Source: Diplonema japonicum (Eukaryota; Protista; Euglenozoa: Diplonemea). Taken from it: a stretch of DNA of 64,000 nucleotides. A model generated the notes under the pieces. It was not told the origin of the DNA and did not search any database. It saw only the letters and a program-made list of their open reading frames with translations. The stretch lies in contig OZ025662.1 in the NCBI GenBank assembly GCA_964019335.1, forward strand, positions 496,001-560,000, in the 5' to 3' direction. Position 1 is the stretch's first letter, and each line of letters begins with the position of its first letter. A program made the position numbers and the translations under genes. Positions 25,964-38,758 of the stretch are shown here, piece after piece.

Positions 25964-25964
<1 letters not shown>

Positions 25965-26039
25965 GGGACCAATGTTTCCAACCTCCCTGTGGTGGTTCCT
26001 GGTAATTGTGGTTTGGAGAAACACAAGCGAAAGGGAAAC
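25964..26039 (+). ncRNA. HDV-like self-cleaving ribozyme (family B)
   Basis: P1 GGGGACC/GGTTCCT (G.U first pair), P2 GTTTCC/GGAAAC, P3 ACC/GGT, L3 TCCCTGT, P1.1 CC/GG, P4 TTGT-GTTT/AAAC-ACAA, J4/2 GCGAA (catalytic C 26028). Confidence 0.85.
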
Positions 26040-26412
26040 TCTCGTTCTAAAGCCGTACACGTGGGGAAACCTGGACGGGGGTGGAGAGCCCACCCTACGC
26101 GTGGCGCCAGTTAGCATCGCCCTCAACGGAGAGTCCCTTATCCCATTACATCGAACAAGGAGGTGGCTTCACCAGGTCAGGCAAGTAGCCTCCCCGCGGC
26201 ATCGTGCCAGTGAAGCAAGCCTCGCACAACTCTCCAGTTGGTGTTTAATTGCTTCTGTGGCCCCTCTCCCTATTCCAATTTCCAAGCTTTCTTTACCTCT
26301 CCACTTTTACTTTCTACGGGACCACAGGGAACTTGGGAGGCTTCGGGGCGAAGTTTCACAAGGGTGGCCGCTGTGTCACATACTGCATGGCACCACTAAA
26401 ATCGAGACAACT
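25964..26412 (+). mobile_element. Family B SINE-like element, full-length copy, headed by an HDV-like ribozyme
   Basis: Homologous to 29232-29606 (-) and 43182-43393 (+); flanked by T-runs on both sides. Confidence 0.8.
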
Positions 26413-26433: not shown

Positions 26434-26715
26434 GCTGGTGGGGAGAACATGGAAAATATAAGAAGTACATCAGATGTGTTGTTCGCTGTTGACCTCCTCG
26501 TCGGTAGCGCCCGAGAGGAACGTAATGCAGATGCTCAGGGTGACGAACAGGCAGCAAACTAGTCTTGGTCATCGGGTCGCCCCGGCTGGGGTTGAGCTGT
26601 ACACCGCACGCATTAAGGACACAACGCAGAACGCAGAAGAAGCTACAACTCGGCCGTGCGCCCCCTGTAATCAAATAGGGAGATAGTTCTTGTGCCAACA
26701 ACGGCCTCCTTTAAC
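26434..26715 (+). mobile_element. Family A SINE-like element, copy with a 10-nt deletion in the ribozyme
   Basis: Aligns to 36213-36527 but lacks CATCACCGGT (the P1 3' strand). Confidence 0.8.
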
Positions 26716-28031
26716 TCTTATTTTTATATTTTAGTAGGTCGTTCACGCTTGAACGCCACCTAGTGTTGCAATCAAAGCCCCATCTTTTTTTTTTTCTTTT
26801 TCTGTTTCAGCGGCAGCTGCACCAGACCTTTACGAGCTGTTCATCAGCTATGGGCGTGCCGCCCCAGTTTAAGAGGGGGGGGGACAAAAATAAAAAAGAA
26901 ATTGTAAAAATGAATTTTTTGTTTTATTTTCTAAAAAGAAACGAGAGTCGGCAGCTTTGTTCGGATTTAACCCTTCTGGTAAAAAAAAAAGCCGACTTTT
27001 TTGCGCAAAAATAACAATGCCGCCCAACTCTTCCCCCCCCCCCCCTTTTCTACTTTTTCCAATGCAACATACAAAAAAGAAAAACTGGTTGTCTAAAGCA
27101 AAAAGGGTACGGAGGCAACGTGTTTACGGGTTATAAGCCTCTCCAGGTTCTACCCCATCACAAATGAACAAGTGTGACGACTCAAGACGAAAGAGATGAC
27201 GCAGCTAAGTGCGGGCCAGTACCTCGTAGTGGCCACCAAGGCCGACACGTATAAGCAATGTCCCTTTCTTTTTCGCACTCTATAGATAAAGTTAGTAGGA
27301 AAAAAGAGAAATTATCCCCTAAACGCCCAAGCATTTGTCCTTATTTCAAAATTTGCTTTTTTTTTTTAATTTTTTTTTTATTTTTTTTTTTTTCAAAATA
27401 TATGGCATTTTGTTTTAACTATATTTTGCGTTAAAAGTATTGCTTTAATTGAAAACCGGCAGGACGGGCTTTTAGCAAATTAGCCCTTGTGCATGCTGCC
27501 CCTTTTTTTTTTTTCCAGCATTCAAAGCAACAATGAAAAAATGGGAGATAGGCTCCCGGCGTTTAGGGGTTAAGAAGAAGAAGAAAAAAAGAAAATAAAA
27601 AAAATTTTTTTTTGAAGCGAGGAAAAAAAAAAAAAAAAAGTTGCTGAAGATCCTCCTCTATCTCCCTATCCCCTCTAAATAAAGAGAATAAAAAGATTTT
27701 TTTTTTTAAAAGATCTACCTGGTGCAAGCCTCTAGCTTAAAGCCGACACTAAATTTCTGAAATTAAGGTCACTCGATCGAAGGAAAAAGAACCAAGGATT
27801 TCCAGAAGGTATCTGCTAAAAAAGAAAAAAAAAAAAATTCCTGTTTCAGCAGGGCATGCAGCTCTCATTTTTTTTTGTTTTGTTTTGTTTTGTTTTCCCC
27901 GTTTGGGGGTGAATCCGTTCTTATCCTCATTACGACCTCTCAACACTGGCCCCCTTTATCTCATTTTTTTTTTTTTTTTATATTCGATATTATTTTTTCA
28001 TTCTTTTGCAAGAACCTTGTCTAGACAAGAG

Positions 28032-28400: not shown

Positions 28401-28522
28401 TATATCCCCCCCCCCAACACTGGCCCCCCCCCCCCCCCCCCCACGATTACTTGCAAGAACATTTTATCTAAACAAAAAAGGGGGTGAGCGTTGGCAGCGT
28501 GTTCTCCTTCTCCTTTTTTTTA

Positions 28523-28710
28523 GGGGTGGGGATAACATGGAAAATATAAGAAGTACATCAGATGTGTTGTTCACCCTGCCAGGGTCGCTGCACGCATTAA
28601 GGACAGAACGCGGAATGCAGCAGAAGCTGCAACGGCCGAGGTACGCCCTCCAATCAAGTAGACAACGCTTGGGCAGGGTGCCACCAACACTGGCCTCAAT
28701 GGCCTTAAAT
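28523..28710 (+). mobile_element. Family A element, internally deleted copy
   Basis: 5' GGTGGGGATAACATGGAAAATATAAGAAGTACATCAGATGTGTTGTTC and 3' CACGCATTAAGGAC..AATCAAGTAGAC retained; ribozyme core missing. Confidence 0.75.
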
Positions 28711-31927: not shown

Positions 31928-33201
31928 ATGTCACATAATGCCGACCTGCACGCCTCGGACGATGACGACTTCGTGATAAACACACCAGGCACAGGGGAGT
32001 GCCCGCAGGAGCTGACACCGCCGTGTGCTGACACAGCTGACACAGACGACGAAGACGAGCAGCATGACTTCATCCTGAGCAAGATCGGCATGGGAGAGGG
32101 GATGTCCTTCCTGACGACGAAGAAGGATGACGCCCTGATCATGGATGTTCTGGACGACCTGTCCCCAGAGTACACATGCCTCCGCAGAAAAATGGGTGAA
32201 ACAATACCATTTTGGAAACAGCACAGTTGCCCTTCTGCCACGAGCATAGCCGCGCAAGTCACACTAGCCACTGTTGAGCTCATCGGCCCGAGTGCAAAAA
32301 TGGAAGACAACTACGCGGTCGAAAACATCAATGGGGCAACCTGCGGTGTCGTGTGCGACGGTCATGGCGGTTCAGAAGTCGCTGCTTTATCGGTTCAGGA
32401 CGTTATCAAGGAGATCAAAAAAGGCCTCGAAAAAGGTTATGTGGACCTGCCCCACGTTGTGTTCGATGCCATTTTAGAGGTGGACTTGAAACTGTTCCAA
32501 CTCTCAGAGCAAAATAATAAATTCAACAATCAAGGCAGCACCATAACCGTTGTCACCATAAAGGATCATGAAGGCGTCGTGGGTTGGCTGGGAGACTCCA
32601 GAGCGGTCCTTTGCGTGAATGACAAGGCTGTTGATCTAACAAGAGACCACAACCAAAATTCTAATGAGGAGAAGGATCGCCAAATGCGAATTATGGGGGA
32701 TGAGCATCTTCAATTGCCCAGTACAACCCGCGCACTGGGTGATTTTACCGGTAAAAGCACACTGAAAGACCGCAAGGATCAAGCAGTGTCAAACCAGGCT
32801 GAGGTCACATCATTCCGGATAACAGAAAACACTCAATTCATCATTTCTGCGTCAGACGGACTCTGGGATGGGATGTCCTCGCAGGAGGCTGTTGAAATTG
32901 TGAACGGTACCCTGCGCAACACGCAATTTGCTAAGGAAGATATAGATAAGTTGCTGTCCACCCCTGTCGGAGTGCATAGATGTGAGGAAGATTTTGTCAA
33001 GGCGATATGTAGTTCGTTGATCACAAAGGCCACCCAGTCGAGGTCCAATGATAACATCACCGTTCAGGTCTTCCTCCTCCACGACATCCATAGTTATTGG
33101 AGAAGCTCCTCCGCCCAAACTGGTAGCGTCGGCTCCGTTGCTGTTGGCGGGGCATTGCATTACATGTGCGAGTCGCCTGCTGCAGAGCAGATTCATCGTG
33201 T

Positions 33202-33236
<35 letters not shown>

Positions 33237-33288
33237 AATTCCTGCAGCTCACCATTGCCCGCCATACACACCTCCAAGGCTGAACTGA
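31928..33288 (+). CDS. PP2C/PPM-family protein phosphatase; probable intron 33198-33247
   Basis: MED, VCDGHGG, GST, WLGDSRAV, LTRDH, TRALGD, ASDGLWD, DNIT motifs; the poly-A stretch is best explained as a GT..CAG intron. Confidence 0.9.
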
Positions 33289-35943: not shown

Positions 35944-36151
35944 TTTTTTCGTGCATTTGATGATTTAATAATACGCCGGTGCTGACCCTCCGAAAATTTC
36001 AAATCAACGAGTAAAAAATGGGAAAGGGGCACCGGGGGGGGTTTTTTTTTTGGTGGGCCGTTGCTAACCACTTTGTTTATCGTGGTGAAATCTTTTTTAA
36101 GGTTCTACAGCATATAGCTACATTGTGAAAATGCAGCTTTCTGTAAATGTG

Positions 36152-36185
<34 letters not shown>

Positions 36186-36212
36186 ACACAAGGGGGGGAC
36201 TCTTTTTTTTCA

Positions 36213-36341
36213 GGTGGTGGGGATAACATGGAAATATAAAGAAGTACATCAGATGTGTTGTTCGCTGTTGACCTCCTCGTCGGTCATCACCGGTAGCGCC
36301 CAAGTGGAAGAAGCAGATGCTCTGGGTGGCGAACAGGCAGC
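36213..36341 (+). ncRNA. HDV-like self-cleaving ribozyme (family A) with J1/2 hairpin insertion
   Basis: P1 GGTGGTG/CATCACC, P1.2 GGATAACAT/GTGTTGTTC, P2 GCTGTTG/CAGGCAGC, P3 ACC/GGT, L3 TCCTCGTC, P1.1 CC/GG, P4 CGCCCA/TGGGTG, J4/2 GCGAA (C 36330). Confidence 0.8.
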
Positions 36342-36527
36342 AAACTACACGGGCTCAGAATCTTGGTTACCCGGGGCGCCCCGGCTGGGGTTGAGCTGCA
36401 CACCGCACGCATTAAGGACACGACGCGAAACGCAAAAGAAGCTACAGCTAGGCCGAGGTGCGCCCCCTGTAATCAAGTAAATGGTGCTTGTGCAGGGTGC
36501 CCCCACCGGCTTCCTTTAAATCATCGA
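36213..36527 (+). mobile_element. Family A SINE-like element, most intact copy, headed by an HDV-like ribozyme
   Basis: Homologous to 26434, 28523 and 60586 copies; between T-runs. Confidence 0.8.
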
Positions 36528-36797
36528 GTTTTTTTTTTGTTCGGTGTGTTACCTACATCTCATCTCCATCACTAGTGAATTATTCACCCTCCCCCCCCAT
36601 TTTTTTGAGCGTCCGACGCAGCAAGGGGGAAAAGAAAAAAATAAGATGGAAAAAAAAAAATGTAAAGCGGTAGATTTGTGCAGTTGAAAGAAGGGCCCGT
36701 TTTCCCCCCCACATTCCTCTCACCCCCCCTCCCCCTTTGTTTGTGACGCCTTTCACGTTCGATAATAAGAACTTGGATCCTTCGATAAACCACTAGC

Positions 36798-36851
<54 letters not shown>

Positions 36852-36920
36852 CGAGTTGGCGGCCCTGATTGTAACGAGTTGTTGAGAGAATATCAATTAT
36901 CAATCAAGATTATATTTGGT

Positions 36921-36959
<39 letters not shown>

Positions 36960-37559
36960 CCCTCCTCTGTTTTACAGCAGTCACCAACGTTGCAAATGTT
37001 CCTTTTCTTTTTATATTTTTTTTTTCTTCCTGCTCTTCGCCATTCTGTCCCCCCCCCGTTTTGTGGGTGGTGTTTGGGGTACCATGAACCCCGGGTCCTC
37101 CTTAGGGCCATTTTTTTAATTTATTTCCAGGAAGATTTTTTTTTAAAAAAAGAAAGGAAAGAAGAAAAAGGGGGTGGAAGAAATAGACAGATGCCACCAG
37201 TCATCAGAGGAGGCTTATCTCATGCATCTCCTTTCTATATATTTTTTCCCCTGCCCTAAGCAGAGCAACAACCAAGATAAGCACATTTAAAAAAAGGGGG
37301 AGGGGGAGGGAGGGATCTGCGACTTAGTTACATCTTTTAAGTTTTCTTACCAGCTATATATATTTTTCTTCCCCCCTCTTCTGGAATTTGTGCAAACACG
37401 TATATCAACAATAGATAGATTAAACACAGAACGAATGAAGAGACAGAAAATAACTTTCTCAGGTTTTTCAAAAAAAAAAAAAAAAAAAAAGGCCCTTCTC
37501 TAATTTTTCTATTCTTTTAGACTTCAACTTCAAGGCCCATGTGGTGGCGAATAAGGACT

Positions 37560-37590
<31 letters not shown>

Positions 37591-37661
37591 CATTCTTTTT
37601 TTTCCCCCTTAAAATAGCCTCTTATGTGCAGAGTAAGAGATGTAGTTTCATCACACGAGAT

Positions 37662-37697
<36 letters not shown>

Positions 37698-38025
37698 CGG
37701 GGTTAACCGTGGTTGTTTAGCTTAAACCGTCACCAGAAAAAAAAAGGAAAAAAAAAAAAGGGAAACTAACTTTGCCTACAGAATTCTCTAAGGAAACACA
37801 GCACACGGATTTTTATTTAAAAAAAAAAAAACACAAAATATTAAAGAAAAACACTCCCTGTTTTTTCTTCCTCTTTCCCCCTCCCCCAATAAAAGAAACA
37901 GAGTGTACGCAGATCACCGTACTGGGGCAACTTGTTTAAGGAGGGGTGACGAGCCCCTCCCTTTCTAAACGTAGTAGTTTCGGACCAGGTAGTTGCAACC
38001 ATGGGAAAAAAAGAAACAAAAAAAC

Positions 38026-38076
<51 letters not shown>

Positions 38077-38758
38077 ATTAAACCAAAAGGAGGGGAAGGA
38101 AGCAGATAAAACTATTACTTTGTTCAAGAAAACAACTATCATTTTCTTTGAAAAAAAGGGGGGGGGGGGGAGGAAACTGACCGAATACAGAAGGGTCTTT
38201 TTTTTCTTTTTCTTCTCCCCTTCTCTTCTTCTTTTTCCTTTTTTTTTCTTTTTCTTCTCCCCTCTCTTTTAGCAGAAAAGGTGCTTCATTGACAAACAAT
38301 AGGTTCACCCGCAGACCTGTCTTCCTCTTTTTTTTTTCTTTCTTTTTTTTTCTTCATTCCCCGATTGTCCCCCCCCTTTTTTTTTATTACATTTACTTCA
38401 ACAAAAAGAAAAAAAACGGTTCATTTGGCGGCAAGTAAGTGGTCCTCAAGGGGATTTGCCCTTAAACATCGCCTTCTTCGTAAAAAGGTGGAACAATATA
38501 CGACATCTGTTGCCTTTGACATCTGTTGCCTTTGACCAGTGTTTTTCTTTACCTGTGCGACTTGAAATCCCAGTTTTAAAGAAGTTTTTTTCGCGATTTT
38601 TTTTTTAAAAGAAATTTGCACGCGAAACAAAGTGTAGCGCAGCTAGGGGGGAGGGGAACGACGATAAAAAAAAAAATTATTCCCCCCCCCTCCCCATTAT
38701 TTGCACAAAAAAAAGAAAAAAATATATAAGGAGAGCGGGAAAAAAAAAAAAAAAAAAA

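What the first reader, a model, noticed from the sequence alone, without database searches (positions are those of the whole stretch)
36213..36341. Second, unrelated HDV-like ribozyme heading repeat family A, with a structured J1/2 insertion
Seen in sequence: P1 GGTGGTG (36213-19) / CATCACC (36285-91); an inserted hairpin GGATAACAT/GTGTTGTTC; P2 GCTGTTG/CAGGCAGC with one bulge; P3/L3 ACC-TCCTCGTC-GGT, close to the UCCUCG loop of HDV and R2-type ribozymes; P1.1 GG; P4 CGCCCA/TGGGTG; and GCGAA with C36330. The repeat starts at the P1 G in the 36213 and 26434 copies and within 1 nt of it at 28523. The 8-nt L3 (usually 7) is also present in the 26434 copy, so it is a family trait. Families A and B share only the ribozyme core, implying two separate ribozyme-bearing lineages.
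Basis: partly seen in the sequence, partly recalled or inferred. Interest (0 to 1): 0.9.

Follow-up and report, generated by a model that had tools for sequence, protein, structure and literature searches.

The report
Ribozyme-headed short retroposon, known design
The first 129 bases of a 316-base jumping element, present many hundreds of times in this protist genome, fold on paper into a complete HDV-type self-cutting RNA that would trim the element out of the long host transcripts it rides in; this strategy is already known from other retroposons, so it is a well-supported new example, not a new kind.

Summary
Window 36213-36341 (+) contains every element of an HDV-like double pseudoknot in the right order. 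These are a 7-bp P1, a closed J1/2 hairpin, P2, a P3/L3 that aligns without gaps to HDV, a GG for P1.1, P4, and GGC-GAA with C36330.

A fixed descriptor hits only twice in both strands of the window, at 36213 and at family B (25964). Shuffles give 0.11 hits. Both hits sit at the 5' edge of a repeat.

The repeat is a 316-bp SINE-like element (36213-36528). 525 genomic copies carry the exact core. Copies have T-rich target duplications and a (TA)n/T-run tail instead of poly(A). They point the same way as flanking genes (49 of 54 ORFs).

The two subfamily consensuses differ at 28 substituted sites. None lies in a helix or core position (0/76 versus 28/240, p=4e-4).

Weak points:
- no covariation
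- Rfam HDV score of only 16 bits
- a G-C pair instead of G·U at the cleavage site
- no RNA data

The structured J1/2 insertion and the 8-nt L3 are both known features. The 26434 copy lacks the P1 3' strand and is dead. Other windows of this scan already reported this family.

Verdict: a probable ribozyme and a new member of a known kind.

The parts
36213..36528 (+). One young copy (97-99% identical to its subfamily) of the 316-bp SINE-like element 'family A'
   Evidence: similarity to 30 genomic copies starts at G36213 and ends at ...TCATCGAG 36528.
36213..36341 (+). Predicted HDV-like self-cleaving ribozyme, 129 nt; predicted cut is 5' of G36213
36213..36219 (+). P1 5' strand GGUGGUG; G36213 is the predicted +1 nucleotide
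   Evidence: Pairs with 36285-91; all 7 pairs are standard in 29-30 of 30 copies.
36221..36263 (+). J1/2 peripheral hairpin, equivalent to P1.2: 9-bp stem 36221-29/36255-63 with a 25-nt loop
   Evidence: MFE -7.1 kcal/mol. The stem is invariant between subfamilies, while 5 loop positions differ. It closes J1/2 with only G36220 as linker.
36264..36270 (+). P2 5' strand GCUGUUG
   Evidence: Pairs with C36334 and 36336-41, with A36335 bulged (helix 3, 99.5% of cells paired).
36271..36284 (+). P3 (ACC/GGU) enclosing L3 UCCUCGUC
   Evidence: Aligns without gaps to the Rfam RF00094 consensus gCC-UCCuCGcU-GGc. The fourth L3 position is T, C or A in different copies.
36285..36293 (+). P1 3' strand CAUCACC followed by GG of P1.1
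   Evidence: GG 36292-93 pairs with C36275 and C36276.
36297..36328 (+). P4 stem-loop: CGCCCA/UGGGUG with a 20-nt loop
   Evidence: helix 6. The older subfamily has 6 more nt in the loop and a changed outermost pair.
36330..36333 (+). J4/2 CGAA; C36330 is the predicted catalytic cytosine (C75 equivalent)
   Evidence: GGCGAA aligns to the GGCuAA of the Rfam HDV model. CGAA is unchanged between the two subfamily consensuses; single copies carry point changes.
36334..36341 (+). P2 3' strand C-[A]-GGCAGC
36200..36212 (+). Upstream T-run plus CA: insertion-site context and part of the target duplication
   Evidence: positions -12 to -3 are 77% T across 64 copies; position -1 is A in 49 of 64.
36529..36538 (+). 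T-run directly after the element's 3' end
   Evidence: There is no poly(A). The older subfamily has (TA)n and then a T-run.
26434..26717 (+). Old, decayed family A copy (79% identical) that has lost the P1 3' strand through a 10-nt deletion
28522..28690 (+). Family A copy with an internal deletion that removes P2 through P4
   Evidence: 41.6 bits.

Best explanation
Window 36213-36341 is the 5' head of a non-autonomous, SINE-like non-LTR retroposon, and it encodes an HDV-like self-cleaving ribozyme. The element lies in T-rich spacers in the same orientation as the host genes, so host read-through (polycistronic-type) transcription copies it as part of a longer RNA (orientation shown, transcription inferred). 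The RNA would fold into the nested double pseudoknot P1/P1.1/P2/P3/P4 (the fold is drawn from sequence and pair counts, not probed), and the J1/2 hairpin would hold P1 and P2 together (inferred). C36330 would then catalyse cleavage 5' of G36213, leaving an element RNA whose first nucleotide is the first nucleotide of the repeat (inferred). A partner reverse transcriptase would copy that RNA into a new T-run. This gives T-rich target duplications of 6-15 bp and a (TA)n/T-run 3' junction instead of poly(A) (the junctions are shown; the priming mechanism and the partner are inferred).
For: 1. All helices are present, in HDV order, with standard pairs.
2. P3-L3-P3'-P1' and GGCGAA align without gaps to Rfam RF00094.
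3. The descriptor hits only at 25964 and 36213 in 128 kb, against 0.11 expected, and both hits are at repeat 5' ends.
4. The predicted cleavage site equals the family's 5' boundary in more than 60 copies. Positions -2 and further upstream are not conserved.
5. The young and old subfamily consensuses differ at 28 substituted sites plus indels. None falls in the 76 helix or core positions, against 28 in the other 240 (Fisher p=4e-4). The differences fall in the P1.2 loop, the P4 loop and the body of the element.
6. 525 genomic copies carry the exact 28-nt core, against 0 for the reversed control. Young copies are 97-99% identical, so the family was active recently.
7. 49 of 54 flanking long ORFs lie on the ribozyme-sense strand (p=4e-10).
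8. There are precedents. HDV-like ribozymes head L1Tc, NARTc and SIDER elements (PMC3185411, PMC4035085) and R2 (PMC3774820). Stable J1/2 helices activate large HDV-like ribozymes (PMC4908430).
Against: - Rfam RF00094 scores only 16.3 bits (E=9; gathering score 50) and pairs the P1 3' strand with GUGUUG 36255-60 instead. No Rfam family reaches its gathering score in the window.
- There is no covariation: every pair is invariant or changes on one side only.
- The cleavage-site pair is G-C, not the usual G·U wobble.
- P2 has a bulged A.
- The nested MFE is no better than that of shuffles (z=+0.59).
- Position -1 is A in 77% of copies, so the RNA 5' end could lie one nucleotide upstream, or nucleotides may be added at integration.
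- No RNA data could be obtained.
Confidence: 0.78

Rival explanations
1. The fold is a real HDV-like relic or a weak ribozyme, but the element's 5' end is set by something else. One candidate is an internal promoter that starts transcription at or next to position 1, as Pr77 does in L1Tc. Another is processing at the A(-1)G(+1) dinucleotide that follows the upstream T-run.
For: [quoted passage not shown] Position -1 is A in 49 of 64 copies, and a T-run followed by AG looks like a splice-acceptor context. The G-C pair at the cleavage site departs from the canonical wobble.
Against: The constraint between subfamilies follows the ribozyme helices exactly, with loops free and stems fixed. A promoter alone would not predict that pattern. 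No spliced-leader sequence is attached to any copy. No tRNA-like Pol III head was found.
Confidence: 0.12
2. The resemblance is chance. The conserved 5' region is a protein-binding or reverse-transcriptase-recognition structure that merely happens to be drawable as an HDV fold.
For: Low Rfam score, no covariation, and an unremarkable folding energy.
Against: The descriptor expectation is 0.11 per 128 kb, yet a hit lies exactly at the repeat's first base. The L3 and J4/2 residues match HDV. A second, unrelated family in the same window shows the same arrangement.
Confidence: 0.07
3. The element is really on the minus strand, so that the upstream T-run is its poly(A) tail, and the plus-strand 'ribozyme' is antisense and meaningless.
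For: T-runs of variable length (8-40 nt) precede G36213 and its equivalents in most copies.
Against: The variable simple-repeat tail, (TA)n in 0-8 units followed by T-run, lies at the other end. 0-2 variable nucleotides separate the T-run from GGTGG, and several copies have none or no T-run at all (L006, L002). Target duplications flank the element directly at both ends. The plus strand is the gene-sense strand.
Confidence: 0.03

Closest known systems
L1TcRz / Pr77-hallmark ribozymes of trypanosomatid L1Tc, NARTc, ingi/RIME and SIDER elements
   Same: An HDV-like ribozyme occupies the first nucleotides of a non-LTR retroposon, including short non-autonomous ones. It cleaves at the element's +1 position and frees the element from host co-transcripts in a euglenozoan with long same-strand gene arrays. 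L1TcRz also lacks the G·U wobble (it has C1-G) and is still active (PMC3185411, PMC4035085).
   Different: By inspection there is no sequence similarity to Pr77; for example, T. congolense L1Tco has CCACCTCAACGTGG in place of ACCTCCTCGTCGGT. Family A is 129 nt long with a structured J1/2, against 77-126 nt. Its 3' tail is (TA)n/T-run, not poly(A). The host is not a trypanosomatid: the best protein match is 100% to a EukProt transcriptome and the next is 46%. Family B of this window is the one that looks Pr77-like.
R2 (and R4, Dong, Baggins, RTE) retrotransposon HDV-like ribozymes
   Same: The P3/L3/P1.1 core is close to HDV. J1/2 is large and variable, P4 is variable, and P2 can carry mismatches. 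[quoted passage not shown]
   Different: R2 is autonomous and specific for the rDNA site, and its P1 often uses upstream 28S sequence. Family A is a dispersed 316-bp non-coding element whose P1 lies wholly inside the element.
drz-Agam-2-1, a large HDV-like ribozyme with a P1.2 peripheral helix
   Same: A stable helix in J1/2 brings the ends of P1 and P2 together. In family A the helix is 9 bp at -7.1 kcal/mol, above the roughly 4 kcal/mol plateau reported (PMC4908430), and it is separated from P1 by a single nucleotide.
   Different: The host is different (mosquito) and the sequences are unrelated. Activation by the helix is measured there and only inferred here.
Hepatitis delta virus genomic and antigenomic ribozymes (Rfam RF00094)
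   Same: The topology is the same. L3 is UCCUCG.. with 8 nt, GG forms P1.1, and GGCGAA carries the catalytic C followed directly by P2 (alignment).
   Different: Family A has a 44-nt J1/2 (linker G36220 plus the 43-nt hairpin 36221-36263), G-C instead of G·U at the cleavage site, a different P4 and a bulge in P2. It scores 16 bits, below the family threshold of 50.

Membership tests
HDV-like self-cleaving ribozymes | Nested double-pseudoknot order: P1 - J1/2 - P2 - P3 - L3 - P3' - P1' - P1.1 - P4 - J4/2 - P2' | tested here: met
   all 34 pairs can be drawn and 97.7% of cells are paired in 30 copies.
HDV-like self-cleaving ribozymes | P1 of about 7 bp whose 3' strand directly follows P3' | tested here: met
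   36213-19 pairs with 36285-91 over 7 bp with no mismatch.
HDV-like self-cleaving ribozymes | G·U wobble at the cleavage-site end of P1 | tested here: not met
   G36213 pairs with C36291 in all 30 copies. This feature is not universal: the active L1TcRz has C1-G (PMC3185411).
HDV-like self-cleaving ribozymes | 3-bp P3 closing an L3 that carries U, CC and G; the CC pairs with GG after P1' to form P1.1 | tested here: met
   ACC-UCCUCGUC-GGU followed by GG, aligned without gaps to RF00094; the P1.1 pairs are CG in 29-30 of 30 copies.
HDV-like self-cleaving ribozymes | Catalytic cytosine in J4/2, directly before the P2 3' strand | tested here: met
   G-C36330-GAA is followed by C36334, which pairs with G36270 next to P3. 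The sequence and position fit; the chemistry is untested.
HDV-like self-cleaving ribozymes | Score at or above the Rfam gathering threshold | tested here: not met
   RF00094 scores 16.3 bits against a threshold of 50, E=9. There is no gathering-level hit in the window. The long J1/2 displaces P1 in the model.
HDV-like self-cleaving ribozymes | Covariation supporting the helices | tested here: inconclusive
   No pair shows changes on both sides; the copies are too similar. Indirect support: the subfamily differences avoid all helices.
HDV-like self-cleaving ribozymes | Site-specific self-cleavage that gives 5'-OH and 2',3'-cyclic phosphate ends | not testable with these tools
Ribozyme-headed non-LTR retroposons (NARTc/RIME/SIDER-like SINEs) | Dispersed copies with target-site duplications and a defined 5' end at the cleavage site | tested here: met
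   Informative duplications of 6-15 bp were found in 13 of 64 copies, and the 5' boundary lies at G1.
Ribozyme-headed non-LTR retroposons (NARTc/RIME/SIDER-like SINEs) | Poly(A) 3' tail | tested here: not met
   The 3' end is followed by a T-run, or by (TA)n and then a T-run.
Ribozyme-headed non-LTR retroposons (NARTc/RIME/SIDER-like SINEs) | An autonomous LINE partner that shares the head or the tail | not tested
   The genome has at least 150 RVT_1 matches with open frames of up to 2185 aa.
Pr77 hallmark of the L1Tc/ingi clade | Sequence homology to the 77-nt Pr77 consensus | tested here: inconclusive
   Compared only by eye with the T. congolense L1Tco head printed in the supplement of PMC4035085. 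Family A does not resemble it; family B does.

The most novel reading that the evidence does not exclude
Family A, with family B and their unseen LINE partners, may represent a retrotransposition mode that uses no poly(A). In this mode the element RNA, cut at its 5' end by the ribozyme, would be primed on a U-rich 3' end by the A-run of a nicked T-tract. Insertion would then be confined to sense-strand polypyrimidine tracts. The 500 or more intact ribozymes embedded in host transcription units would also cut host pre-mRNAs and so shape the expression of neighbouring genes, as proposed for SIDER2 in Leishmania.
Probability: 0.2. Interest if true: 0.65.

Novelty: new member of a known kind. Interest (0 to 1): 0.4.

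Why it matters
It extends ribozyme-headed retroposons beyond trypanosomatids, into a poorly sampled euglenozoan-like protist. It also shows two unrelated HDV-type heads in one genome: an HDV/R2-type core with a P1.2 helix in family A, and a Pr77-like head in family B. With 525 exact cores, this genome offers a large natural set for studying how HDV-like ribozymes tolerate a G-C cleavage-site pair, changes at the fourth L3 position (T, C or A) and a peripheral J1/2 helix. The tail-less, T-tract-targeted insertion mode is the more unusual aspect and deserves its own study.

Tried and rejected
- Rfam at gathering level found nothing in the window. At E-value level it gave only a 16-bit HDV hit with an alternative 6-bp, one-mismatch P1 at 36255-60. 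I rejected that P1 in favour of the perfect 7-bp P1 at the element's first base.
- The plain MFE fold was uninformative because of the pseudoknots.
- Covariation counting found no variation.
- A covariance model searched over the genome returned only the top 150 near-identical copies and no divergent relatives.
- A metagenome scan for the core with a free P1' gave 120 loci. Eleven passed a loose P1+P2 check, and all of those are GC-rich, coding-like sequences unrelated to the element, so I treat them as chance.
- A looser descriptor produced only low-complexity false hits besides families A and B.
- No tRNA-like head was found.
- The minus-strand, poly(A)-tail reading was rejected on tail, junction and orientation evidence.

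Full report
**What is in the sequence**

The exact coordinates are:
- P1: 36213-19 with 36285-91.
- Linker: a single G at 36220.
- J1/2 hairpin: 9-bp stem 36221-29 with 36255-63, and a 25-nt loop.
- P2: 36264-70 with C36334 and 36336-41; A36335 is bulged.
- P3: 36271-73 with 36282-84.
- L3: UCCUCGUC, 36274-81.
- P1.1: GG 36292-93 with C36275 and C36276.
- P4: 36297-302 with 36323-28.
- J4/2: C36330-G-A-A, directly followed by the innermost P2 pair, C36334-G36270, which abuts P3.

The nested part (P1, hairpin, P3 and P4) evaluates to -24.3 kcal/mol with 25 standard pairs. The hairpin alone folds at -7.1 kcal/mol.

**Is it more than chance?**

Rfam finds nothing at gathering level in the window. 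With permissive thresholds, the HDV model RF00094 matches 36253-36342 at 16.3 bits, E=9. That is below any threshold. The alignment is still informative. P3-L3-P3'-P1' and GGCGAA align without gaps to the HDV consensus. The model cannot span the 44-nt J1/2, so it uses GUGUUG 36255-60 as a poorer P1.

I wrote a descriptor that requires:
- a 7-bp P1 directly after P3';
- a 3-bp P3;
- an L3 of 7-8 nt starting with UCC;
- a GG for P1.1;
- a P4 stem of at least 4 bp;
- C-N-R-A in J4/2;
- a P2 of at least 5 bp.

It hits twice in both strands of the 64-kb window, at 25964 (family B) and at 36213. One hundred dinucleotide shuffles give 0.11 hits per window. One parameter, the spacing between the catalytic C and P2, was widened after the first run to allow for the P2 bulge. 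Both hits begin exactly at the 5' edge of a repeat.

**What the repeat is**

The stretch is the head of a 316-bp element, 36213-36528.
- Genome searches give about 1,300-1,400 first-look candidates. There are 525 exact matches to a 28-nt core pattern and none to the reversed control.
- A young subfamily is 97-99% identical to the window copy. An older subfamily is 83-92% identical.
- Similarity begins at G36213 in more than 60 copies. Position -1 is A in 49 of 64 copies, T in 13, and C or G in one each. Position -2 is not conserved.
- The 3' end is ...TCATCGAG followed by a T-run in the young subfamily. In the older one it is ...CTCA, then (TA) in 0-8 units, then a T-run. There is never a poly(A).
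- Informative target duplications of 6-15 bp, all T-rich, flank the element directly. Examples are T10CCA, TTTACT, TTTTTTTAA and TCTTTTCT.
- The variable simple-repeat tail marks the plus-strand 3' end, so the ribozyme strand is the element's sense strand.
- No tRNA-like head is present.

**Context**

The window has long open frames almost entirely on the plus strand, carrying ordinary Pfam domains. One of the proteins is 100% identical to a EukProt Trinity transcript, and its next-best match is only 46% identical. The host is therefore an under-sampled protist. Other notes of this scan call it a euglenozoan, probably a diplonemid, which I did not verify.

In 83 loci, 49 of 54 long flanking open frames lie on the same strand as the element's ribozyme strand (p=4e-10). 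The element is therefore expected to be transcribed as part of host read-through RNA. That is the setting in which a 5'-processing ribozyme is useful.

**Constraint**

Within the family no base pair covaries, because the copies are too alike. The two subfamily consensuses, however, differ at 28 substituted sites plus three indels. None of the differences lies in the 76 positions of P1, the hairpin stem, P2, P3, L3, P1.1, CGAA or the five inner P4 pairs. All 28 lie in the other 240 positions (Fisher p=4e-4). If both sides of the outermost P4 pair are counted as constrained, p=0.02. Five differences fall in the hairpin loop and a 6-nt indel falls in the P4 loop. This is the pattern expected if the copies that founded subfamilies needed the fold.

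The fourth L3 position (U23 in HDV numbering, from my own knowledge of the HDV sequence) is T, C or A in different groups of copies, so it is tolerant.

- The 26434 copy has lost TCATCACCGG, so it has no P1 3' strand. Only 4 genomic copies carry this deletion. It is a dead copy, not evidence about the family.
- The 28522 copy has lost P2 through P4.
- An 8-nt L3 is the length in the Rfam HDV model.
- A long or structured J1/2 is known. R2 ribozymes have J1/2 loops of 216-498 nt, and P1-P1' spacings from 23 to more than 700 nt (PMC3774820). A stable J1/2 helix, P1.2, accelerates drz-Agam-2-1 by up to about a thousand-fold, with a plateau above about 4 kcal/mol (PMC4908430).
- The G-C pair at the cleavage site departs from the usual G·U. 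The active L1Tc ribozyme also lacks the wobble, having C1 paired within a G-C-rich P1 (PMC3185411).
- Families A and B show no similarity beyond chance (local score 20, against a shuffle mean of 18.6 and maximum of 30). 'Unrelated' is therefore fair.

**Mechanism and rivals**

The best reading (confidence 0.78) is a functional HDV-like ribozyme that cuts 5' of G36213 and so defines the 5' end of the retroposon RNA within host co-transcripts. The rivals are:
- the fold is real but the 5' end is set by an internal promoter or other processing, as in the dual Pr77/L1TcRz system (0.12);
- a chance resemblance in a conserved protein-binding region (0.07);
- a minus-strand element with a poly(A) tail (0.03), rejected on tail, junction and orientation evidence.

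**What could not be done**

- No RNA run holds the stretch.
At least 150 RVT_1 matches exist, with open frames of up to 2185 aa.
- A metagenome scan for divergent relatives gave only chance hits, judged from their GC-rich, coding-like sequence.

**Novelty**

No paper in the held library combines diplonemids with HDV-like ribozymes. Ribozyme-headed non-LTR retroposons, long J1/2 regions and P1.2 helices are all established. Other agents of this scan have already described what appears to be the same family on other pieces of this genome (s1-861305, s1-865580, s1-866996). I treat those notes as leads, not as evidence. The finding is a well-supported new member of a known kind. The tail-less insertion into T-tracts is the more unusual feature, and it belongs to the neighbouring 'system' finding.

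Noticed in passing
window 25964-26039 (+): The family B head passes even the strict HDV descriptor: P1 is GGGGACC/GGTTCCT with a G·U at the cleavage site, and L3 is TCCCTGT. By eye it resembles the T. congolense L1Tco Pr77 head printed in the PMC4035085 supplement. Rfam gives no HDV hit there at E<=10.
   Followed up: partly
64 family A copies in L001-L090; window 36211-36212: The nucleotide before G1 is A in 77% of copies and C in only 1.6%, although the upstream context is pyrimidine-rich. A C at -1 could extend P1 by pairing with G36292 and so disrupt P1.1, an effect described for L1Tc and R2. In some copies 1-2 extra nucleotides (CA, AA or A) lie between the target duplication and G1.
   Followed up: partly
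3' ends of family A copies, e.g. window 36529-36538; L032-L080: There is no poly(A) tail. The older subfamily ends in (TA)0-8 followed by a T-run, and the young one in a T-run of 3-50 nt. Insertions sit in sense-strand T-tracts. This suggests priming on a U-rich RNA 3' end, or a partner endonuclease specific for T-tracts.
   Followed up: partly
G000, whole genome (listing): The strand of family A copies is uniform over whole contigs (for example all minus on C21 and all plus on C16, C17 and C19), as expected if the copies follow large same-strand gene arrays.
   Followed up: no
L058:1-1300 and L059:400-1300: There are tandem or nested arrays of partial, older family A copies (78-89% identical) next to a full copy.
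   Followed up: no
L022:1700-1800: Two family A copies lie head to head on opposite strands, only about 25 nt apart.
   Followed up: no
G000 contigs C51, C52, C61, C13, C18: Reverse-transcriptase (RVT_1) matches with intact open frames of about 1430-1445, 1960 and 2036 aa occur in clusters. They are probably several active LINE families and candidate partners for families A and B.
   Followed up: no
window 26380-26410 versus 36510-36528: Families A and B share only a short 3'-terminal motif: A has AAATCATCGAG and B has AAAATCGAG(ACAAC), each followed by a T-run. This might be a common recognition site for a partner reverse transcriptase, or it might be chance.
   Followed up: no
window 31928-33283 (+): The PP2C-domain protein is 100% identical to a EukProt Trinity transcript over 94% of its length. 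The next-best match in 5.8 billion proteins is 46% identical, so the host lineage is very poorly sampled.
   Followed up: no
window 36150-36185, 36800-36960, 37559-37700, 38000-38100: The spacer that holds the element contains many long A- or T-homopolymer tracts of 25-50 nt, and these recur throughout the window.
   Followed up: no
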